DNA of 7,421 nucleotides, from positions 1 to 7,421 of IMG/VR virus record IMGVR_UViG_3300017469_000123; one strand, written 5' to 3'. The stretch's first letter is position 1; every line of letters begins with the position of its first letter. The translations under genes and the position numbers were made by a program. The notes under the pieces are model-generated. The model was not told where the DNA came from and searched no databases. It saw nothing but the letters and a program-made list of their open reading frames with translations. Shown here in pieces: positions 1-7,421 of the stretch.

Positions 1-1724
1 TTTATCTGCTCGAAAAGAGAGTTAGCTTGCATAGCGGAAGACATTGCGTTCTTTAACACCCTAAGAGCTTCAGTATAGTTGTTCATTAAAGCCAAGAAGT
101 ATGCTGATGGTGAACTGGCATTTACCTGTTGAGTTACGAGTGTGTTTACAGTGTTCAAGTAATCTAGTGTTTGTTGGGTCTTCTCAAGCCCTGACAGATA
201 AGTTTGCACCTGGGTTTGGTAGTTTTGTGCAATTTCAAACAGCTGTTTGGCGGAACTTTGCATATCATAGCTCTCGCTCGAACTTAACAACTGCAGAGCT
301 TGCGATATATCGCTTAGAATCGTATCCTTATTCGCTAGAATTGTTTTAATGGAGGACGATGTGTTGTTTTGTGGTGGCGTAAGCAATTGCTGAGCTTCTG
401 CTAACAACTGCATAGCTTGCGATATGTTCTTTGCGTCTTGGATATCACCCTGGACTGACTGCAAATTCATTTGAAGATATTGAGAAGCCCTTTCCAAAAC
501 CTGGTAGTTCTGCTGAAGAACCTGATACACGCTGTTGAAGTATTGAGAAAGAGAAAGGAATGTTTGTGTTGAAGGTGGTCTGGGTAATTGCTGTAAGCCC
601 TCCAAAATCGTAAAACCTTGAATATATGAAGTTAAATTTATGTTAATATCGTTCTGTTGTGCTATTTGCGAAGCTTGTTGTAGATATTGAACAGCCTCAG
701 AATAATTTCCACTTTGTGCTTCTTGTTGTCCTTTTTGTATATCTTCAAGTGTTTGCAGGTAAGCAGTGTATTTAGTATACATTCCCTGGACAGTTTCGGA
801 TAACGAACTTGCCAAACTTGATAACGGTGTATTGTCAGCGTTAACATTCTGCAATTGAATCTGTGCCTGTTTTATAAGGTTTATTGCACTCTGTATTGCA
901 GACGTTGAATTTCTATTCTGTTGTGCAATATTCTGTGCATTAACTAGCAGAGTGACTACACTCAGAAGCTGAGAGCTGACCTGTTCAGACTGTTGGTAAT
1001 CGTTTGCAAGAGATGAAAAACCATTGTAATAACCTGATGCTTCTGTAGCGTACTGTGATGCAGTGGCGAAGAACGATTTTAATGTTTGCAGGTATTGTTG
1101 TAACTCCTGTAATGTTATTTCTCCCTGTGGTGGTTGTGGGAACGCAGGTATCTTAGCTAAGTAAGAAACAGCTGTTGTTACGTCTTCAAGCCTCTTGTCG
1201 CTGATGTTATTTTGTTGTGCTAATTGCAGGGCTTGCTGAAGATACTGATAAGCTTCTGCGAAGTTTGCTTTTTCCAGTTCACTGTTAGCATTATTAATGT
1301 ATTGTCCTATCTGTTGTAGTGCCTGCACTGTCTGTATTTGTTGCTGTATTTGCGTTACGTTGATTACATTCGGGTATTGTTGGGCTATTTGTAGAGCTTG
1401 CTGAAGGTTACTCAAAGCAGTGTTGTAATCATCGTTCTTCAATGCCTCGTTTGCAGAATTGAAAAGCTGAATAACATTGATGTAAGCGAAATAAGGCTGT
1501 AAGTTAATGTTCGGGCTTAGCTTTTGTGCATTCTGCAAATCGGTTAATGCCTGGTTGACGTTACCGTTCTCTGCGTCATTAATTGCTTGTTGGACATATA
1601 TTAACGCTTGGATTTTTTGTGCAGTTTGAGTTAAACCGTTTTGTTCTGCTAATTGCAGGGCTTGTTGGTATTTGTCCTCAGAGAGTAACTGGTTTATCTG
1701 TTGTGTGATAGGATTAGCACTCAT
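1..1724 (-). CDS. Giant Gln-rich TPR-like alpha-helical repeat protein, probable virion/tail protein (3' end outside window)
   Basis: Manual translation from ATG at 1724 gives 574 codons with no stop to the window edge: MSANPITQQINQLLSEDKYQQALQLAEQNGLTQ...NFAEAYQYLQQALQLAQQNN...GNYSEAVQYLQQASQIAQQND...NAMSSAMQANSLFEQI. In-frame TGA upstream at 1737-1739; TATA box 24 bp upstream. Very large helical virion proteins are typical of bicaudaviruses (family knowledge); function is inferred. Confidence 0.9.
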   Translation of the reverse strand, partial: MSANPITQQINQLLSEDKYQQALQLAEQNGLTQTAQKIQALIYVQQAINDAENGNVNQALTDLQNAQKLSPNINLQPYFAYINVIQLFNSANEALKNDDYNTALSNLQQALQIAQQYPNVINVTQIQQQIQTVQALQQIGQYINNANSELEKANFAEAYQYLQQALQLAQQNNISDKRLEDVTTAVSYLAKIPAFPQPPQGEITLQELQQYLQTLKSFFATASQYATEASGYYNGFSSLANDYQQSEQVSSQLLSVVTLLVNAQNIAQQNRNSTSAIQSAINLIKQAQIQLQNVNADNTPLSSLASSLSETVQGMYTKYTAYLQTLEDIQKGQQEAQSGNYSEAVQYLQQASQIAQQNDININLTSYIQGFTILEGLQQLPRPPSTQTFLSLSQYFNSVYQVLQQNYQVLERASQYLQMNLQSVQGDIQDAKNISQAMQLLAEAQQLLTPPQNNTSSSIKTILANKDTILSDISQALQLLSSSESYDMQSSAKQLFEIAQNYQTQVQTYLSGLEKTQQTLDYLNTVNTLVTQQVNASSPSAYFLALMNNYTEALRVLKNAMSSAMQANSLFEQI

Positions 1725-1738
1725 TATATATAACTCTC

Positions 1739-1755
1739 AAACAGCTGTTTAAAAA
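1739..1755 (-). promoter_or_regulatory. Archaeal TATA box (TTTTTAAA, 1755-1748) overlapping palindrome AAACAGCTGTTT (1739-1750); probably a leaderless transcript
   Basis: Minus strand reads AATAACTTTTTAAACAGCTGTTTGAGAGTTATATATAATG. TATA-to-ATG spacing of ~24 nt fits Sulfolobales leaderless mRNAs. Confidence 0.75.
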
Positions 1756-1785
1756 GTTATTAGATTCTCGTCTCCTCCCACTCTG

Positions 1786-2112
1786 CTATCTTTCACGTAA
1801 AAACCAGTAGATAAACGCCAGACCAATGAGCATCGCGAACACTGTAATATCAAAAAACGGGTATGCAATAATGCTGTATAATATTAGCAATACATTGTAT
1901 TGTTGGGAATAATACTGCGGTTGGTTCAGGGTAAATGTAGAATTAGCTATCTGTATCGAATCTTTTGTGCTATTTGTATATATCATTGAAGAGTTAGAGA
2001 TGATGAGAGTCTGTTTACTTATAAGGTTAAAGAACGGGAAAGCTACGAATACTAACATTGTAGCTAACGCAAAAAATACTACTGCTGTAGTTATGGACGG
2101 TTTCAATTGCAT
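1786..2112 (-). CDS. Small 2-TM membrane protein (108 aa), candidate minor virion glycoprotein
   Basis: N- and C-terminal hydrophobic segments flank an S/T/N/Q-rich loop with three N-x-S/T sequons (NSS, NST, NST). SD-like GGTGAT lies just upstream of the ATG (GGTGATTAATCATG). Confidence 0.85.
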   Translation of the reverse strand: MQLKPSITTAVVFFALATMLVFVAFPFFNLISKQTLIISNSSMIYTNSTKDSIQIANSTFTLNQPQYYSQQYNVLLILYSIIAYPFFDITVFAMLIGLAFIYWFLRER

Positions 2113-2114
2113 GA

Positions 2115-2369
2115 TTAATCACCTTCTTCCCTTATTGATGATGCTATAATAAAAATGATAGCTACAACTATGCCTATTCCAAGCCCATACATCCAGTAGT
2201 TTATGTACGGGACAAAACTTGTGTAAGCAGTATGTATATCTGCGGAGACTACATGTGAAATATTGTTCGTAGGCTGAACAGTTTTAGACACTTGAGACTG
2301 TGCAACATTAAAATTATTGAAAATATACACAAGAAGACCGAAAACTATAATGAATATTATCGTAAACAT
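2115..2369 (-). CDS. Small 2-TM membrane protein (84 aa as called; ~105 aa if initiated at ATG 2431 with a -1 shift)
   Basis: Two hydrophobic helices with a loop carrying an N-I-S sequon. The frame stays open upstream to 2435 (GFFSDLATALRSSISFIVIA-M), but the SD-equipped ATG at 2431 is one base out of frame. Confidence 0.8.
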   Translation of the reverse strand: MFTIIFIIVFGLLVYIFNNFNVAQSQVSKTVQPTNNISHVVSADIHTAYTSFVPYINYWMYGLGIGIVVAIIFIIASSIREEGD

Positions 2370-2431
2370 GGCTATAACTATGAACGAAATAGATGAACGT
2401 AACGCTGTTGCTAGATCAGAAAAAAACCCAT

Positions 2432-2797
2432 TTAATCACCCATGTTCAAAAGTTGAGATTCTTCAAAGCCATTCGCCCACTCTTCTAACGTTTGCAATAG
2501 CCCGCGTTTTTTAGCTTCCTTAAGTATTTCTTTCCTAACGGAGTGTGGCACGGGTTCGCCGTCCGGTATACCGTTTTCTTTTATTTTATCTTTGATTAGA
2601 AGGACTAGGTCATGTAACGCTTTCTTTAGGGGTGGGAAGGCGTCAGACCACGCCTCGTCCCCTGCGATTTTTAGCGTTACTTCTGGGTAATTTATTTCAC
2701 CTTTTTCGAATAATAGAAAGTCATGTAGTGCGTCCCTGGCATACTTCTCTGGATGTAAGTCGTCGAACTCAGATTTAACCCAATTTGACCAGTTCAT
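2432..2797 (-). CDS. ATV p131-like four-helix-bundle virion protein (bicaudavirus 'coat'/nucleocapsid family), 121 aa
   Basis: Motif FEKGEINYPEVTLKIAGDEA closely matches the ATV p131 segment as I recall it (FENGQLGYPEVTLKLAGEEA). ATG 2797 is preferred over TTG 2809, which overlaps the operator and lies at or upstream of the expected TSS. Confidence 0.8.
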   Translation of the reverse strand: MNWSNWVKSEFDDLHPEKYARDALHDFLLFEKGEINYPEVTLKIAGDEAWSDAFPPLKKALHDLVLLIKDKIKENGIPDGEPVPHSVRKEILKEAKKRGLLQTLEEWANGFEESQLLNMGD

Positions 2798-2808
2798 TTT
2801 TCCACACA

Positions 2809-2837
2809 AAACATATGTTTGAGTTGTGGTTAAAAAA
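2809..2837 (-). promoter_or_regulatory. TATA box (TTTTTTAA, 2837-2830) followed by palindrome AAACATATGTTT (2809-2820)
   Basis: Read directly; the palindrome lies between TATA and start codon. Confidence 0.75.
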
Positions 2838-2840
2838 TAT

Positions 2841-5096
2841 TTAGATCTTGAAGCCCTGCTTTACCATTTCAAGTATCTTCTTAGCTTTTTCCTCTTCGCC
2901 CTGCGTTAATTTACTAATATTTTGGTTCATCAGCTGTTCTTTCTTTAATTCAGACAGATAGTTGTAATAGTTAACAAGAGCGAACAGTGTACCGAATAGA
3001 TTGATTAATTGTATTCTGTACTTTGGATTCCTTCCAGTTTCCTTTGCAACATTATCTATGAACTTGTCCTTAAGTGTCTCGGGGAACGCTGATAACTCTT
3101 GCCTCGCCTTGTACAAGCAGATTTCATCCTCTTCCGAGCATATCCCTAGTAGTTTAACTATAGTTTTGAACACCTGCATGTCGAGGGTTGAGGGGCTTAT
3201 AGTAGTTTTAACAATTAACGCACCGTACTGATCGTCAAAAGCTTTCTTTGCAAAATTCAAAAGTGATTTTAATTCCTGCAATTGCCCTTCATTTGCTTGG
3301 TTGAGGTCGAAGTCATTTATCCTTAGTATAGCATACTTGCGGTCTGGCGATAACCCATTAACCGACCCGACCAACAACGTGTTATTTTTATCTACAAACA
3401 AGGGTAACGAGAGACCTGCAGACCGTAGCTCTGTAAAAGCGTCAACAAGGTCTTGAAGGTATTTAAGCTTCTGAGGGTCGGCATTCTTAAGGTTCTGTAT
3501 ACTTTCGATCATGCCGTAACTCTTATTCTCGAACAAATTTGTGAATGAGAAGATCAAATAGGCATCCTTGTATAATTGCACCATGGCACTCAGTTCTTTT
3601 TGATACCTCTCGAACTCGTCTGGGCTTAACGGTCTGATGACTCTTAAGTCTAACACTTGATCGGGAGCGAAAGAGTCTAACAGCTGTATAAGATAATTTT
3701 GTCTAAGTTCTGCGAATACATTAGATAAAACGCTCCTGGTAGTCTCTTCTACAACGCTTCCCTGCTTGTACGTAACTTTCTTGCTTGAAGATTTGTATTC
3801 AGATGGGAATTTGGTGACTAACGCCAAGACGGTAGTAGGGAGAACGCTGGCGTTGTTAGTCTCTAACAGTTCTAGTATCCTGTTCCAATTCTTTTGTAAC
3901 TCGTTCCAGACCTTTTCAGCAAACTCTTCACGCTCTTTTCTGCTTAAAGATTCCCCTTGCCTTATGCCGTATCTGTTTAAGTATGGTCTTAGCCAATCTG
4001 GAATGTATAGTGAAAGTTCCATATTGAGCACTTTTTCTAATTCTAATTTATTTTGCTCAATATTACTATTTTCTACCGCATTCTGTTGTTCCTGAGCTTG
4101 AGGAGCGGGGGTCTGTTGAGGAGTACCTTGCTGTTGAGGGGTAGCTTGAGGAGTGGGAACCTGTTGAGGTTGAGGATTACCGAAAACTATTACATCATTT
4201 TTTTCGAGATTGATTACACGTTCGTTTCCTGTGAGATATTGCGAATAGTTTCCTTTCGGTAAAAGTACCGCAGGAGAAGATCCATATGTGCCTATAACCG
4301 CTTCTGCAATAAGATCAATCGGTAACTTTTCAAGGAATTTTTGTAACTCAGGACTCTCAACATTTTCACTAGGTATAAATTCTGCTGGTGGTATGGTAAC
4401 GTTGCCATGATTTTGTTGGTACTGAGATAGCAGGAAATCGGAAATTTCATTTACAATCCCCTTGGGGATGAGTATAATGTGCGGGTATAAGTCCTTCCTG
4501 AAGGAAGTGTGAATCGCATATGCGGTATAGAAATTTTCTCGGAGTGCAGGATTAACGGATTCTAATGTTTGAATTAACGTCTTTACTTTTGCCTCAGCTG
4601 ATTTCGTTTCTTCTTCTGATTTGCTGTTACCAAATGGAACTTTTGGATATAGGTGGATCACATCAAAAACAAAACCTTTACTTGTAACACCTTCTATTAC
4701 ATTAACATTCATAGTCTTCTCATAAAGCGAAAAACCATATGCATCGATTACCTTGCTGACATTACCTAAATTGAGGTGTATAGTCTTTTCTTTATTCTCT
4801 TCGCCATATTTCACTTCTATGTCATCTGGGTTCTTGATGGGATTTCTCCCTTCCGGAGTACTTACTTTAAGTATAAATGGCATATATCCTTGCGAGTTCA
4901 CAAAACTAAATGTTGCCATAGGCTGATAGTTAACTAATGTTAATGATCCGTCAAACTTCTTTGACGCTTCTTTGCCAAATGCAAAATCTCTACTAGATGC
5001 CAAGAACTTAGAAAAAACCTTGACGAGATAGTCATCTAACGGAACGAGCGAAGGTGAAGCATTCGAAGCTGAAGCCAAAGCATTGTTACTACTCAT
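2841..5096 (-). CDS. Hypothetical 751-aa two-domain viral protein (alpha/beta N-half, P/Q/T linker, helical C-half)
   Basis: Long ORF with its own TATA box and SD-like GAGTGATG (5110-5103). No Walker A, MIDAS or nuclease motif recognised. Confidence 0.9.
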   Translation of the reverse strand: MSSNNALASASNASPSLVPLDDYLVKVFSKFLASSRDFAFGKEASKKFDGSLTLVNYQPMATFSFVNSQGYMPFILKVSTPEGRNPIKNPDDIEVKYGEENKEKTIHLNLGNVSKVIDAYGFSLYEKTMNVNVIEGVTSKGFVFDVIHLYPKVPFGNSKSEEETKSAEAKVKTLIQTLESVNPALRENFYTAYAIHTSFRKDLYPHIILIPKGIVNEISDFLLSQYQQNHGNVTIPPAEFIPSENVESPELQKFLEKLPIDLIAEAVIGTYGSSPAVLLPKGNYSQYLTGNERVINLEKNDVIVFGNPQPQQVPTPQATPQQQGTPQQTPAPQAQEQQNAVENSNIEQNKLELEKVLNMELSLYIPDWLRPYLNRYGIRQGESLSRKEREEFAEKVWNELQKNWNRILELLETNNASVLPTTVLALVTKFPSEYKSSSKKVTYKQGSVVEETTRSVLSNVFAELRQNYLIQLLDSFAPDQVLDLRVIRPLSPDEFERYQKELSAMVQLYKDAYLIFSFTNLFENKSYGMIESIQNLKNADPQKLKYLQDLVDAFTELRSAGLSLPLFVDKNNTLLVGSVNGLSPDRKYAILRINDFDLNQANEGQLQELKSLLNFAKKAFDDQYGALIVKTTISPSTLDMQVFKTIVKLLGICSEEDEICLYKARQELSAFPETLKDKFIDNVAKETGRNPKYRIQLINLFGTLFALVNYYNYLSELKKEQLMNQNISKLTQGEEEKAKKILEMVKQGFKI
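4083..4175. repeat. Low-complexity degenerate repeats encoding PQPQQVPTPQATPQQQGTPQQTPAPQAQEQQ
   Basis: ctgttgagg at 4113, 4131 and 4161; 27-nt direct repeat 4095-4121 vs 4143-4169 (23/27 identical). Confidence 0.8.
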
Positions 5097-5109
5097 TTTT
5101 TACATCACT

Positions 5110-5146
5110 CAAACATATGTTTGCTTGTAGTTATTAAAAACTTTTC
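5110..5146 (-). promoter_or_regulatory. BRE-like GAAAAG + TATA (TTTTTAATAA, 5140-5131) followed by 14-bp palindrome CAAACATATGTTTG (5110-5123)
   Basis: Read directly upstream of the 751-aa ORF. Confidence 0.8.
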
Positions 5147-5149
5147 TTG

Positions 5150-5200
5150 GTGACCTCCCTCCCCGCTCTGAAGGGCGAGGTTTGCCGTTCGCTTTGTCGG
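5150..5200 (-). mobile_element. Minimal IS200/IS605-derived non-autonomous element (PATE-like, fused left/right end, single hairpin)
   Basis: Minus strand: TTTAA|CCGACAAAGCGAACGGCAAACCTCGCCCTTCAGAGCGGGGAGGGAGGTCAC. It is a GC-rich island with the CCTCGCCCTTCAGrGCGGGGAGG hairpin typical of Sulfolobales IS605 ends, a TTTAA target on the 5' side, a TCAC-type 3' end and no target duplication. The end sequences are compared from memory. Confidence 0.7.
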
Positions 5201-6037
5201 TTAAATTATGTGGAGACCGAATATTACTGCTAACAACATCATCCCCACTATACCGAGCACGAAGTATAACATTATCCTGTTCATTGATTGCACACGCTTA
5301 CTCTCATTCTGCAACTTCAATAACTTCACTAAATTTGCATTCATCTCCTTAACCGTCGTGGGTATCGTGCTTAATATCTCCAACTCTTGCGATAGTCGAC
5401 GGTTAAGCAACAATTTAGGGTCAACAGCGATAGAAAGTTTTGTGGAAGGAGAGAGCGTTATAGCACCGGTAATCATCTTTTTGACCTTAGCCAACTGTGC
5501 TAGTAAGTCTGGTTCCGCTGTATCATACTCAGACACAGGTATCGATGTTTCTAACGTCTCTAATCTTATCGCATATGGCATTGTGTTGTTTTTCCTTATT
5601 GTGATCAACAACGGTCTATGCATCTTCCCGTATTGTATCATCCCGACCATGGATTCCGAGGTGACCGGGACAATTAGCTCTTCGCCTGTAACTGGGTCAT
5701 GGACTGTGTACAACGACGGCGATAATTTTTCGCCTACGTATAGTTGAGCAGACCTAGTAGATATATCAACGTTGACAACTACAACGTCACTATTCTTAGA
5801 GCGACGGATTTGCCTTATTAGCCCATTTCTTATGGGGTCTTTCATATACGACCTTCTGAACGTTACGTATACAACAATAAATACTACAAATAGTATACCT
5901 AGAGCGATAAAAATGTAAACATATGGCGGAGATAATAGCATTCGAAATAACGAGAAAACTGTAACTTGTTGAGCTTGTGTGTGTGGGGCTACAGTGTTTG
6001 TCAAACTTATGTTTGAAGACGGTGTTTTCAGTGCCAT
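5201..6037 (-). CDS. Membrane protein with N- and C-terminal TM helices and a pre-C-terminal coiled coil (278 aa)
   Basis: TM1 YVYIFIALGILFVVFIVVYVTF; TM2 IMLYFVLGIVGMMLLAVIFGL. Start moved from GTG 6097 to ATG 6037 because TTTTAAAA (6066-6059) lies ~22 nt upstream of it. Confidence 0.85.
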   Translation of the reverse strand: MALKTPSSNISLTNTVAPHTQAQQVTVFSLFRMLLSPPYVYIFIALGILFVVFIVVYVTFRRSYMKDPIRNGLIRQIRRSKNSDVVVVNVDISTRSAQLYVGEKLSPSLYTVHDPVTGEELIVPVTSESMVGMIQYGKMHRPLLITIRKNNTMPYAIRLETLETSIPVSEYDTAEPDLLAQLAKVKKMITGAITLSPSTKLSIAVDPKLLLNRRLSQELEILSTIPTTVKEMNANLVKLLKLQNESKRVQSMNRIMLYFVLGIVGMMLLAVIFGLHII

Positions 6038-6087
6038 GTTAATATCTTGGCAGAAGGGTTTTAAAAGAAGAAGGAAGCGAAGTCGCG

Positions 6088-6094
6088 AAAAAAA
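6088..6094 (-). terminator. Putative oligo-U terminator of the capsid gene
   Basis: T7 tract ~20 nt after the capsid stop, followed by a pyrimidine-rich stretch; typical of Sulfolobales terminators. Confidence 0.5.
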
Positions 6095-6114
6095 CACGTG
6101 CTTGACTTAGAGTT

Positions 6115-6588
6115 TTAACCAGTCTTGAATTTCTCCATTATTATGGATATTATACCTGCCGCGATGAGTACTATCCCTGTCACACCTAACAGCACGTACA
6201 GCGTCGGGAAGAAGCTGAAGAACGATACCATACCGTTTACGAGTGGGTGGGTCAAGTTATATGCCAACGTTCCTGGTGACGGATTGCTTATTGCTGAGGC
6301 AGTAGCTGTGGCGAAGATAGACAGAATGAGACCAGATAGTCCTATTATTACACCGACGATTAGGAGGGCTATTGCTATCGTCGGGATATCAAACCCATTG
6401 GTTCCGAACGTTACTCTGACTAATGACCCTGCTACTCCTGGTTCATGAATTCTAGTCGCTTTCTTTATTTTTGGTATATGAACACTATTTGCCTTTGGTG
6501 TACGAACGTTAATTACCTTGAACATTTTTGCTTTTTTACCACCTGCTCCTACTGATTTCACTGACGGAACGACTACCGAAACCGACAT
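6115..6588 (-). CDS. Major capsid protein of spindle-shaped virus type (hydrophobic two-helix hairpin, SMV1-like), 157 aa
   Basis: Basic N-terminal extension (11 K/R and 1 E in the first 50 aa), then two long hydrophobic helices (IPTIAIALLIVGVIIGLSGLILSIFA; FFPTLYVLLGVTGIVLIAAGIISII) joined by a loop with an N-L-T sequon. This matches the established architecture of bicaudavirus/fusellovirus MCPs. Confidence 0.8.
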   Translation of the reverse strand: MSVSVVVPSVKSVGAGGKKAKMFKVINVRTPKANSVHIPKIKKATRIHEPGVAGSLVRVTFGTNGFDIPTIAIALLIVGVIIGLSGLILSIFATATASAISNPSPGTLAYNLTHPLVNGMVSFFSFFPTLYVLLGVTGIVLIAAGIISIIMEKFKTG

Positions 6589-6601
6589 TTTGCTTCGTGT
6601 A

Positions 6602-6633
6602 AAACATCTGTTTGAGGTATTAATAAACTTTTC
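6602..6633 (-). promoter_or_regulatory. BRE-like GAAAAG + TATA (TTTATTAATA, 6627-6618) followed by palindrome AAACAGATGTTT (6602-6613)
   Basis: Read directly upstream of the capsid gene. Confidence 0.8.
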
Positions 6634-6754
6634 GCTTCACTATTTCTGGTCTGGGAAAAGGTCTCAGCTCCACAGGCACTGGGGGTGGCTCCCACCCCGA
6701 GCGATATAAAAATTGTATAAAAAATTTGGAATTTGGTATGGGTTTGGGCTTCAT
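6620..6754 (-). CDS. Possible 44-aa Pro-rich microprotein (MKPKPIPNSKFFIQFLYRSGWEPPPVPVELRPFPRPEIVKRKVY)
   Basis: Open from ATG 6754 to TAA 6620; preceded by ATATAAAT (6790-6783) and the operator palindrome. Short enough to be a chance ORF. Confidence 0.3.
   Translation of the reverse strand: MKPKPIPNSKFFIQFLYRSGWEPPPVPVELRPFPRPEIVKRKVY
6654..6703 (-). mobile_element. Relic resembling the 3' tail of a Sulfolobales tnpB / 5' part of the omegaRNA scaffold
   Basis: GC-rich CGCTCGGGGTGGGAGCCACCCCCAGTGCCTGTGGAGCTGAGACCT translates as RSGWEPPPVPVELRP, like recalled TnpB C-termini (GWEPPxVPVELRPLP). It contains a 7-bp hairpin at 6682-6698. Confidence 0.55.
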
Positions 6755-6763
6755 TATTCCGTC

Positions 6764-6804
6764 AAACAGATGTTTAAGAAAGATTTATATTTCCTGATCA
6801 GGAA
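6764..6804. promoter_or_regulatory. Possibly bidirectional TATA (ATTTATAT, 6783-6790) flanked by two different palindromes: AAACAGATGTTT (6764-6775) and TTCCTGATCAGGAA (6791-6804)
   Basis: Read directly; on the + strand a purine-rich BRE-like AAGAAAGA precedes TTTATAT. Confidence 0.7.
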
Positions 6805-6823
6805 TTTTGTAATTAGGGTAAAA

Positions 6824-7421
6824 ATGGAACCAGGAGAAATAGCTGGGATCGTAATAGATAGAGTAGTAGATTATTGCCGAAATAACTCCGGAGACACTAC
6901 ACTTCAATGTATGGAATACCATAGTCCAGACCAGTTAGACGTGTTCATAGACGGATATCTTACAGAGGAAGAGGATAATGAACTTGAAAAAGAGATAGAA
7001 AATTCAGACAGCTTCTGGGATGAGCTAAGAAAGCAGTACGACAAGTTGTGGGGTCAAGAGATTGGTGCAATACTCGGTAATTCCCTAGCCGATACATTGT
7101 CATTGTTATATGAAAATATAATACAAAATGATGAGCTTGATGATGCAAGGAAAGCTAGACGCCTAAAAGCTTATGCCGAGGTATTAGATGGGTTCGGTGA
7201 TGCGATTAAGCGTGCATTACAAGAGAGGAAGCCACTAAGTGAGAGAGATTTGGATTACTGGTACACAAAGTTAGGTGATTCTGCATTCGGAGTCAAAAAC
7301 TATAACTATTACGAGGAAATTGGCTATGATCTTGGCTATTATGATACGTTAGACGACAATGACAAATTAGAGGTATTAAGCATTTTGCTAGATGAGGTAG
7401 GTAATGTGTTGTACGACATAG
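6824..7421 (+). CDS. Highly acidic helical hypothetical protein (3' end outside window)
   Basis: 199 open codons from ATG 6824: MEPGEIAGIVIDRVVDYCRNNSGDTTLQCMEYHSPDQLDVFIDGYLTEEEDNELEKEIENSDSFWDELRKQY...LLDEVGNVLYDI; 47 D/E versus 19 K/R by manual count. Confidence 0.9.
   Translation, partial: MEPGEIAGIVIDRVVDYCRNNSGDTTLQCMEYHSPDQLDVFIDGYLTEEEDNELEKEIENSDSFWDELRKQYDKLWGQEIGAILGNSLADTLSLLYENIIQNDELDDARKARRLKAYAEVLDGFGDAIKRALQERKPLSERDLDYWYTKLGDSAFGVKNYNYYEEIGYDLGYYDTLDDNDKLEVLSILLDEVGNVLYDI

What the first reader, a model, noticed from the sequence alone, without database searches (positions are those of the whole stretch)
6620..6790. tnpB-tail/omegaRNA-like relic with its own promoter-plus-operator directly upstream of the capsid gene
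Seen on the minus strand: TATA (6790-6783), operator (6775-6764), ATG 6754, a 44-codon ORF containing RSGWEPPPVPVELRP, a 7-bp GC hairpin (6682-6698), GTGCCTGTGGAGCTGAGACC, then GTGAAGCGAAAAG merging into the capsid BRE/TATA. From memory, Sulfolobales tnpB 3' ends read ...GTGCCTGTGGAGCTGAGACC...TGAAGCAGGAAG, the region that yields the omegaRNA. The terminal right-end hairpin and guide are absent. Inference: inert debris, or a domesticated small RNA such as a guide-less decoy for TnpB, a structured capsid-mRNA leader or a transcriptional-interference RNA, or a de novo microprotein.
Basis: partly seen in the sequence, partly recalled or inferred. Interest (0 to 1): 0.62.

Follow-up and report, generated by a model that had tools for sequence, protein, structure and literature searches.

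The report
Dead transposon guide-RNA fragment in virus
About 50 bases just upstream of the capsid gene of this Sulfolobus spindle virus are a real but truncated leftover of the guide-RNA region of a TnpB transposon, most likely an inert scar at a spot where related viruses often gain and lose DNA.

Summary
The similarity to tnpB 3' ends, recalled from memory, is real. Window 6702-6653 (minus strand) matches the 3' tails of tnpB in ATV, ATV2, pNOB8 and pHGQ25, and copies in 22 of 325 Sulfolobales-order genomes. The best match is 86% over 50 nt, to about 230-nt tnpB-less (MITE-like) copies that hold the exact 20-mer. My covariance model of this family's omegaRNA-like scaffold scores the window 37 bits (E 3.5e-7). 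Only about 48 of 119 scaffold positions are present: the first hairpin and the 5' strands of two long-range helices. Their partners, the invariant purine block, the UUCA-loop hairpin, the right end and the guide are missing.

The downstream gene is the SMV1-type major capsid protein. The TATA box and operator are real but older than the fragment. They belong to a conserved divergent control region. In relatives a 690-880 nt stretch with an accessory gene follows that region, and it is deleted here. ORF44 is a chance chimera.

The junction was found in no other viral or metagenome contig. No run holds this virus, so transcription is untested. Verdict: an ordinary transposon-derived scar with no sign of domestication.

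The parts
6653..6702 (-). Relic of the omegaRNA-coding 3' tail of an IS200/IS605 (IS1341-type, ATV ORF409-like) tnpB element. It corresponds to about the first 48 of 119 scaffold positions. The right boundary (6661-6653) is blurred by microhomology with the viral backbone.
   Evidence: blastn (86% over 50 nt to L040/L041/L061; L062 89% over 44 nt); alignments A2 and A4; covariance model R1 37.3 bits, E 3.5e-7; TnpB residues 367-389 only
6682..6698 (-). P1 hairpin of the scaffold (7 bp, 3-nt loop), intact.
   Evidence: In the family this helix shows compensatory changes: G-C replaced by C-G or U-G in 6 of 34 copies.
6660..6679 (-). It holds the 5' strands of the long-range helices P2a (CCUGU) and P2b (GCUGAG). 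Their 3' partners are absent from the window.
   Evidence: Exact 20-mer in host copies L040, L041, L044 and L062; pair table
6703..6713 (-). 11-nt filler of unknown origin between the viral backbone and the relic. It ends in TTTAT followed by ATC, the same left junction as the orphan copy in viral contig L023.
   Evidence: TTTAT is the TAM reported for solo-tnpB elements of S. islandicus (PMC10640517).
6714..6727 (-). TATA-like remnant of the promoter of the accessory gene that is deleted in this virus. T6 (6724-6719) and T5 (6712-6708) tracts overlap or follow it.
   Evidence: Alignment A3. In L013 the matching TATA lies about 37 nt before the ATG at which phrog_14939 homology begins.
6620..6754 (-). 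ORF44, a chimeric open frame. Codons 1 to about 13 are conserved intergenic sequence. The next codons are filler and then the relic, read in the TnpB frame. The rest is capsid-promoter sequence.
   Evidence: Relatives have 38- and 52-codon ORFs of unrelated sequence from the same ATG, or no ATG at all.
6763..6790 (.). Conserved TATA box (6783-6790) and palindromic AAACA-N3-TGTTT motif (6763-6775) of the divergent control region. Direction of firing is unresolved.
   Evidence: Invariant columns in A3; motif enrichment 13 versus 0.35 expected; 26-nt inverted repeat with the capsid promoter core (I1)
6791..6804 (.). 14-bp perfect palindrome TTCCTGATCAGGAA between the shared TATA and the + strand gene. 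It is semi-conserved in relatives.
6602..6635 (-). Capsid-gene promoter: BRE (includes GCGAAAAG), TATA at 6627-6618 and operator at 6614-6602.
   Evidence: Near-identical in SMV1, SMV4, L010 and L013; same layout as the promoter at 5150-5111 (D1)
6115..6588 (-). Major capsid protein gene (157 aa, hydrophobic).
   Evidence: PDB 7RO2, E 8.6e-84; PMC10589707; strongly represented in hot-spring metatranscriptome contigs
6824..7420 (+). Divergent gene (phrog_16992, function unknown), open at the window end.
   Evidence: homologs in L010, L013, L019, SMV3 and ATSV

Best explanation
Window 6702-6653 is a non-functional internal fragment of the omegaRNA-coding 3' tail of an IS200/IS605-family (IS1341-type, ATV-ORF409-like) tnpB element or one of its tnpB-less derivatives.

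It marks a deletion and recombination junction in a hypervariable slot between a conserved divergent control region and the capsid-gene promoter. In relatives this slot holds a 690-880 nt stretch with an accessory gene (phrog_14939), followed by a conserved 42-nt element. Here both are gone. What remains is 11 nt of filler and about 48 nt of transposon sequence, joined to the capsid promoter through a short microhomology.

The fragment keeps only the first hairpin and unpaired half-helices of the scaffold. It therefore cannot fold into or act as an omegaRNA. ORF44 is an accidental read-through. The upstream TATA and operator are older viral control elements, not parts of the relic.

Shown: identity, extent, truncation, lack of conservation, and synteny. 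Inferred: the order of events (insertion then deletion, or capture of a fragment during break repair) and the lack of function.
For: 1. Identity.
- same-strand matches at tnpB 3' ends and in tnpB-less copies.
- model R1, 37 bits.
- TnpB residues 367-389 and nothing else of tnpB in the 7.4 kb.

2. Truncation.
- The family structure comes from 34 copies: 30 predicted pairs, 15 with compensatory changes.
- The window lacks the 3' strands of P2a and P2b, P3, the invariant UGAAGCAGGAAGC block, the P4 UUCA hairpin and the GTAGYTCAC right end.
- The fold of 6705-6589 is not exceptional (z = -1.2).

3. Slot variability.
- Homology to relatives covers 6884-6730 and 6659-6561 only.
- Between those blocks relatives have 120 nt (SMV3) or 690-880 nt with a gene.
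- The conserved 42-nt element is absent from the window.

4. This transposon family litters related viruses.
- Full tnpB genes in ATV, ATV2, L022 and L024.
- An LE+RE MITE of about 108 nt, present twice in L010.
- Right-end relics in L010, L015, L016 and L017; weaker (12.6 bits) in L019. An 11-nt right-end-like piece in SMV3 was seen by eye only.

5. Singleton.
- The left junction was found only in L023's own contig among the metagenome records.
- The right junction was found in no viral contig.

6. ORF44.
- All four substitutions in the eight codons shared with L013 and L019 are non-synonymous.
- The ATG is absent in L010 and SMV3.
Against: - Transcription could not be tested. No public run holds this virus (shares at most 0.11), so a transcript through the relic is not excluded.
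- The TATA/operator/ATG 6754 spacing (about 32 nt from TATA centre to ATG) equals that of the capsid promoter, so the module could fire towards the relic.
- A second viral contig (L023) has an LE-less copy that starts at the same scaffold position after a TTAT. This hints that such modules may be more than random debris.
- The junctions rest on one metagenome assembly.
Confidence: 0.8

Rival explanations
1. Cis-acting leader. The deletion placed one or two upstream promoters (TATA 6790-6783 with operator; TATA-like 6727-6714) in tandem with the capsid promoter. Some capsid mRNAs would then carry a 100-170 nt leader holding the GC hairpin, which could alter stability or translation.
For: Promoter-like elements are present and conserved. 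The upstream operator is the same motif as the capsid operator, so the two would be co-regulated. The hairpin is stable.
Against: T6 and T5 tracts at 6724-6719 and 6712-6708, typical archaeal termination signals (own knowledge), lie before the relic. There is no conservation. The capsid promoter itself is intact and the same as in viruses without the relic. The whole-leader fold has z = -1.2.
Confidence: 0.07
2. Assembly artefact. The contig joins two different virus genomes, or two places, through a shared high-copy repeat k-mer, so the relic junctions do not exist in one molecule.
For: The relic is a high-copy repeat in the same habitats: contig depth over 6660-6737 is 300-17000 in four runs. 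The two flanks differ sharply in similarity to L010, 95% versus 76%. No independent contig confirms either junction.
Against: A repeat-mediated chimera needs transposon sequence to continue on at least one side in each parent. Here both sides of the 50 nt are viral backbone or filler. That would require two independently truncated copies with identical sequence. Mosaicism is usual in these viruses.
Confidence: 0.06
3. Guide-less decoy or competitor RNA. It would bind host TnpB, or pair with host omegaRNAs, and blunt TnpB activity during infection.
For: Host-type omegaRNA pieces are very abundant in hot-spring metatranscriptome contigs, so TnpB ribonucleoproteins are probably common in the hosts. 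The relic keeps the first hairpin and conserved single-stranded bases.
Against: It lacks about 60% of the scaffold, including every conserved 3' element. In solved TnpB-omegaRNA complexes the 5' part of the scaffold is the dispensable part (own knowledge). It is a singleton, and no transcript is shown.
Confidence: 0.03
4. De novo microprotein. ORF44 would be translated from a near-leaderless mRNA started by TATA 6790-6783.
For: The TATA-to-ATG spacing matches the other viral promoters. The ORF is open for 44 codons.
Against: Relatives have unrelated 38- and 52-codon ORFs, or no ATG, at this spot. All changes in the shared codons are non-synonymous. T-tracts fall within codons 11-16. There is no Pfam hit. 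The 3' third of the ORF is capsid-promoter DNA.
Confidence: 0.03

Closest known systems
omegaRNA / sotRNA of IS200/IS605 (IS1341-type) tnpB elements of Sulfolobales and their viruses and plasmids (ATV ORF409, pNOB8, SisTnpB-type elements)
   Same: Same sequence family, same strand and same reading frame as the last ~40 codons of tnpB. The first scaffold hairpin and the conserved bases after it are kept.
   Different: Only about 40% of the scaffold is present. There is no tnpB, no left end, no right end and no guide, and it is not at a transposon boundary.
PATE/MITE derivatives of IS200/IS605 elements (left end joined to the omegaRNA region and right end), as in host copies L040/L041/L062 and the ~108-nt element in viral contig L010
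   Same: The closest sequence match is to such tnpB-less copies (86% over 50 nt, exact 20-mer). Like them, the fragment begins at the 5' edge of the scaffold.
   Different: PATEs keep both transposon ends and a complete scaffold. This piece has neither end.
HgcC family RNA (Rfam RF00062), with the RE-like UUCA tetraloop motif of sotRNAs (PMC4615843)
   Same: Same general class: a structured RNA from tnpB 3' ends.
   Different: No Rfam hit at the finding. The sub-threshold HgcC hit in the window is a different piece at 5137-5270.
Orphan LE-less scaffold in viral contig L023 (4512-4620)
   Same: Same left junction (TTAT, then ATC, then the scaffold start) and the same 5' sequence (84% over 57 nt).
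   Different: The L023 copy is complete to the last hairpin (110.7 bits against 37.3 bits) and lies in a different genomic context in a different bicaudavirus.

Membership tests
Functional omegaRNA/sotRNA of an IS200/IS605 tnpB element | Sequence homology to the scaffold-coding 3' tail of tnpB, on the tnpB strand | tested here: met
Functional omegaRNA/sotRNA of an IS200/IS605 tnpB element | Complete scaffold: both strands of the long-range helices, the invariant UGAAGCAGGAAGC block and the terminal UUCA-type hairpin | tested here: not met
   Only about model positions 1-48 are present. The model aligned the rest with large deletions.
Functional omegaRNA/sotRNA of an IS200/IS605 tnpB element | Right transposon end (GTAGYTCAC) followed by a guide | tested here: not met
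   Absent. The relic runs directly into capsid-promoter sequence shared with SMV1, SMV4 and L010.
Functional omegaRNA/sotRNA of an IS200/IS605 tnpB element | Adjacent tnpB gene, or a cognate TnpB in the same genome | tested here: not met
   Only TnpB residues 367-389 match in the 7.4-kb window. The rest of the virus genome is not available.
Functional omegaRNA/sotRNA of an IS200/IS605 tnpB element | Expressed as a discrete RNA | not testable with these tools
   No run holds this virus. RNA contigs overlapping 6659-6702 have host-type flanks.
Curated RNA family (Rfam 15) | Hit at gathering score | tested here: not met
   No hit in 6590-6830 even at E up to 10. Rfam also fails to recognise the intact copies of this family.
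PATE/MITE of IS200/IS605 | Left end and right end flanking a short interior | tested here: not met
   No left-end similarity in the window and no right end.
tnpB pseudogene fragment | In-frame similarity to the TnpB C-terminal peptide | tested here: met
   15 of 22 identical residues to ATV TnpB 367-388.
Archaeal BRE/TATA promoter with operator, as the relic's own control region | TATA and operator specific to, or co-inherited with, the relic | tested here: not met
   Both are conserved in relatives without the relic. The motif is virus-wide.
Archaeal BRE/TATA promoter with operator, as the relic's own control region | Mapped transcription start towards the relic | not testable with these tools
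   No suitable RNA data.

The most novel reading that the evidence does not exclude
Bicaudaviruses may carry LE-less, tnpB-less omegaRNA modules. These start exactly at the scaffold's 5' edge, right after a TTTAT-like TAM and next to viral TATA/operator elements. The copy in contig L023 is structurally complete. It could be a virus-borne orphan guide RNA that borrows host TnpB, by analogy with virus-borne mini-CRISPR arrays. The window's piece would be a decayed copy of such a module rather than random transposon debris.
Probability: 0.06. Interest if true: 0.7.

Novelty: new member of a known kind. Interest (0 to 1): 0.2.

Why it matters
It matters little on its own. It is one more transposon scar in a virus family already known to carry tnpB elements.

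It is useful in three ways:
- It is a worked example that a sequence match recalled from memory was correct while the functional reading was not.
- It marks a recombination hot spot directly upstream of the capsid promoter of SMV-type viruses.
- It led to an omegaRNA-like scaffold for the ATV-ORF409-type TnpB family, supported by covariation. Rfam does not recognise this family.

The side observation of a complete orphan scaffold in another bicaudavirus contig (L023) is the only part that might lead to something new.

Tried and rejected
- **Rfam.** Permissive thresholds over the window and over intact family members gave nothing at the finding. There were only sub-threshold HgcC hits elsewhere.
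- **GTGAAGCGAAAAG as a second transposon block.** Rejected. It is the capsid promoter BRE, present in SMV1, L010 and L013 (two changes in SMV4), all without the relic, and it resembles the BRE of the promoter near 5145.
- **Looking for the relic in relatives.** Twelve SMV-like viral contigs lack it. An exact left-junction scan of metagenome contigs found only L023's own contig. A right-junction scan of viral contigs found nothing.
- **Expression.** The best public runs hold at most 11% of the sampled words. Laid contigs over 6659-6702 carry host-type flanks and say nothing about this virus.
- **The relic at 6702-6653 and the hairpin piece at 5208-5151 as two halves of one split element.** Rejected for two reasons. 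SMV1, SMV3 and SMV4 share the gene order without either piece. The 5208-5151 piece is a complete copy of a separate ~49-nt host unit with its own 5' boundary.
- **tRNA or att-site fragment.** No tRNA-like gene was found.
- **Accessory gene as a DUF4065/SocA-like antitoxin** (my first guess from its sequence). There is no Pfam hit, only phrog_14939 of unknown function.
- **ATG 6754 as the ancestral start of the accessory gene.** Rejected. phrog_14939 homology begins at a downstream ATG that has its own TATA.
- **The 20 nt after L023's scaffold as a guide against other viruses.** It matches only the homologous ATPase-gene end of L023's relatives, as expected for plain flanking sequence. Not pursued further.

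Full report
**What the window is.** The 7421-nt window is a fragment of an IMG/VR viral contig. It is related to Sulfolobus monocaudaviruses: 88% identity to SMV1 and SMV1a and 87% to SMV4 over positions 1-6659 (1-6651 for SMV4), and 80% to SMV3. Megablast homology to SMV1 and SMV4 stops at about 6659/6651, inside the finding.

The region 6589-6823 is a divergent intergenic region. The gene at 6588-6115 (minus strand) is the major capsid protein, with E 8.6e-84 to PDB 7RO2. It is the hydrophobic capsid protein described for SMV1 and ATV in PMC10589707. The P131-like 'major head protein' of the database annotation is a different gene, at 2432-2809. On the other side a + strand gene starts at ATG 6824 (phrog_16992).

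**Checking the observation.** All listed features are at the stated coordinates.

**Is it tnpB-derived?** Yes, on several independent lines.
- A sensitive blastn of the intergenic region against phage and plasmid records hit annotated tnpB genes of ATV, ATV2, pNOB8 and pHGQ25. It also hit a non-coding spot in pIT3. Matches span 33-47 nt at 85-94% identity.
- In every tnpB case the match is on the tnpB strand, about 80-113 nt before the stop codon.
- 22 of 325 genomes in the Sulfolobales order match. Many matches lie at the ends of full-length tnpB genes. Others keep only the tail.
- The best matches lie in elements of about 230 nt with no tnpB (L040, L041, L061 at 86% over 50 nt; L062 at 89% over 44 nt).
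- The only part of TnpB detectable in the window is residues 367-389.

**Anatomy of the intact family.** I aligned 34 copies. RNAalifold gave 30 predicted pairs, 15 of them with compensatory changes. The scaffold has these parts, 5' to 3':
- a 5' hairpin, P1;
- a conserved single strand;
- two long-range helices: P2a (CCUGU pairing with GCAGG) and P2b;
- a variable hairpin, P3;
- an invariant UGAAGCAGGAAGC block;
- a terminal hairpin, P4, with a UUCA-type loop;
- the right end, GTAGYTCAC, after which the copies diverge (the guide).

This matches the published picture of sotRNAs/omegaRNAs at tnpB 3' ends with an RE-like UUCA tetraloop (PMC4615843), and of S. islandicus TnpB elements (PMC10640517). 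Rfam does not recognise this family.

**What the window retains.** A covariance model built from 30 copies scores the window 37.3 bits, E 3.5e-7. Only about the first 48 of 119 positions are really present. That is P1 plus the 5' strands of P2a and P2b. Everything needed to close those helices is missing, as are the conserved 3' elements, the right end and the guide. The predicted fold of the possible leader is unremarkable (z = -1.2).

It is the same in SMV1, L010 and L013, and differs at two positions in SMV4; all four lack the relic.

**Context in relatives.** Twelve SMV-like viral contigs were fetched through the capsid protein. They share two blocks with the window: 6884-6730 and 6659-6561. 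What lies between the blocks differs:
- SMV3 has about 120 nt.
- L010, L012, L013 and L019 have 690-880 nt. In L010, L012 and L013 this holds a 162-196 aa accessory gene (phrog_14939). L019 has a truncated copy plus a small repressor-like gene.
- All of these also have a conserved 42-nt element just before the capsid promoter. That element is absent from the window.
- The window has only 70 nt: a remnant of the accessory gene's TATA, 11 nt of filler, and the relic.

The right junction shows a short microhomology between the relic and the viral backbone. The slot is therefore a hot spot of gain and loss, and the relic marks a deletion and recombination junction.

The same transposon family has left other traces in these viruses:
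- full tnpB genes in ATV, ATV2, L022 and L024;
- a MITE of about 108 nt, present twice in L010;
- right-end relics in L010, L015, L016 and L017, weaker in L019, and an 11-nt right-end-like piece in SMV3 seen by eye only.

**The promoter and operator.** The 13-nt palindrome is strongly enriched: 13 hits against 0.35 expected. It sits 9-14 nt before the start codons of the minus-strand genes. I inferred the start of the gene after the capsid gene from the motif and from the MITE insertion site in L010.

The copy at 6775-6763 and the TATA at 6790-6783 are conserved in relatives without the relic. They therefore belong to the viral control region, not to the relic. Their direction is ambiguous:
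- The spacing to ATG 6754 equals that of the capsid promoter.
- The better BRE faces the + gene.
- A 14-bp palindrome lies between the TATA and ATG 6824.
- The ATG 6754 context forms a 26-nt inverted copy of the capsid promoter core.

T6 and T5 tracts lie between ATG 6754 and the relic. In archaea such tracts usually terminate transcription (own knowledge).

**ORF44.** In relatives the same ATG opens unrelated 38- and 52-codon ORFs, or is missing. All four substitutions in the eight shared codons change the amino acid. The accessory gene's family homology begins at a downstream ATG that has its own TATA.

**Conservation and expression.** Exact scans found the window's left junction only in L023's own contig, and the right junction nowhere. 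No public run holds this virus; the best share of sampled words is 0.11.

I laid one DNA run and three metatranscriptome runs on 5100-7421. Very deep short contigs overlap only 6659-6702. Their flanks are of host tnpB/MITE type, not the window's. This shows that the host family's RNA region is abundant in such samples. It gives no information about the relic itself. These are contigs, so strand and ends are unknown, and DNA carry-over is possible. The capsid gene of relatives is well represented in the RNA runs.

**Conclusion.** The evidence favours an inert scar (about 0.8). Small probabilities remain for a cis effect on capsid transcripts, an assembly chimera, a decoy RNA or a microprotein.

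**A side lead.** Viral contig L023 holds a complete LE-less scaffold (110.7 bits). It begins at the same position after a TTAT, and it replaces about 32 nt that are present in its relatives. This is the basis of the low-probability 'virus-borne orphan guide RNA' reading.

Noticed in passing
window 5151-5208 (minus strand): A second transposon-derived piece lies right after the stop codon of the gene downstream of the capsid gene. It is a complete copy of a ~49-nt unit ending in a UUCA-loop hairpin and GAGGTCA. The piece is absent from SMV1, SMV3 and SMV4 at this spot. The unit is present in 83 of 325 Sulfolobales-order genomes, with up to 83 candidate copies per genome and unrelated flanks. 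It gives a sub-threshold Rfam HgcC hit (19.6 bits) and very high DNA contig depth in run X1.
   Followed up: partly
window 236-249, 1738-1751, 2808-2821, 5110-5123, 6002-6015, 6602-6614, 6763-6775: A virus-wide palindromic motif, CAAACA-N-TGTTTG-like, gives 13 hits against 0.35 expected. Mostly it sits between the TATA and the start codon of the structural genes, so it is probably the binding site of a viral or host regulator of late genes.
   Followed up: partly
window 6791-6804: A perfect 14-bp palindrome, TTCCTGATCAGGAA, lies between the shared TATA and the + strand gene. It is semi-conserved in L010, L013 and L019, and may be a second operator.
   Followed up: no
L010 2345-2390; L013 2390-2432; also SMV1, SMV3, SMV4: A conserved ~42-nt element (TTATTTCTGYCTAACTGG...CCCTATTCA) lies just upstream of the capsid promoter in all relatives examined. 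It is deleted in the window. Its function is unknown.
   Followed up: no
L023 2450-4640 (IMGVR_UViG_3300005861_000260): A complete tnpB-less, LE-less omegaRNA-like scaffold lies at 4512-4620. It starts right after a TTAT beside a viral TATA/operator, about 540 nt downstream of a 508-aa TnpB-like ORF of another family, with an opposite-strand gene in between. Relatives L087-L089 have about 32 unrelated nt at this spot instead.
   Followed up: partly
L010 3021-3128 and 442-534; L021: A left-end-plus-right-end MITE of about 108 nt from the same transposon family is inserted between the capsid gene and the next gene, and again about 2.6 kb away. This points to recent transposition into SMV-like genomes.
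   Followed up: partly
window 6659-6702, in runs X5, X19, X23: Hot-spring and mat metatranscriptome contigs of host-type omegaRNA pieces have depths of about 300-17000, against 10-700 for neighbouring viral genes. This suggests the scaffold RNA of this TnpB family is highly abundant in situ. The data are contigs only and the strand is unknown.
   Followed up: no
window 2432-2809 versus 6115-6588: RefSeq annotation of SMV1, SMV3 and SMV4 calls the P131-like protein the 'major head protein'. The true capsid protein homolog (PDB 7RO2) is annotated as a hypothetical membrane protein (PMC10589707).
   Followed up: yes
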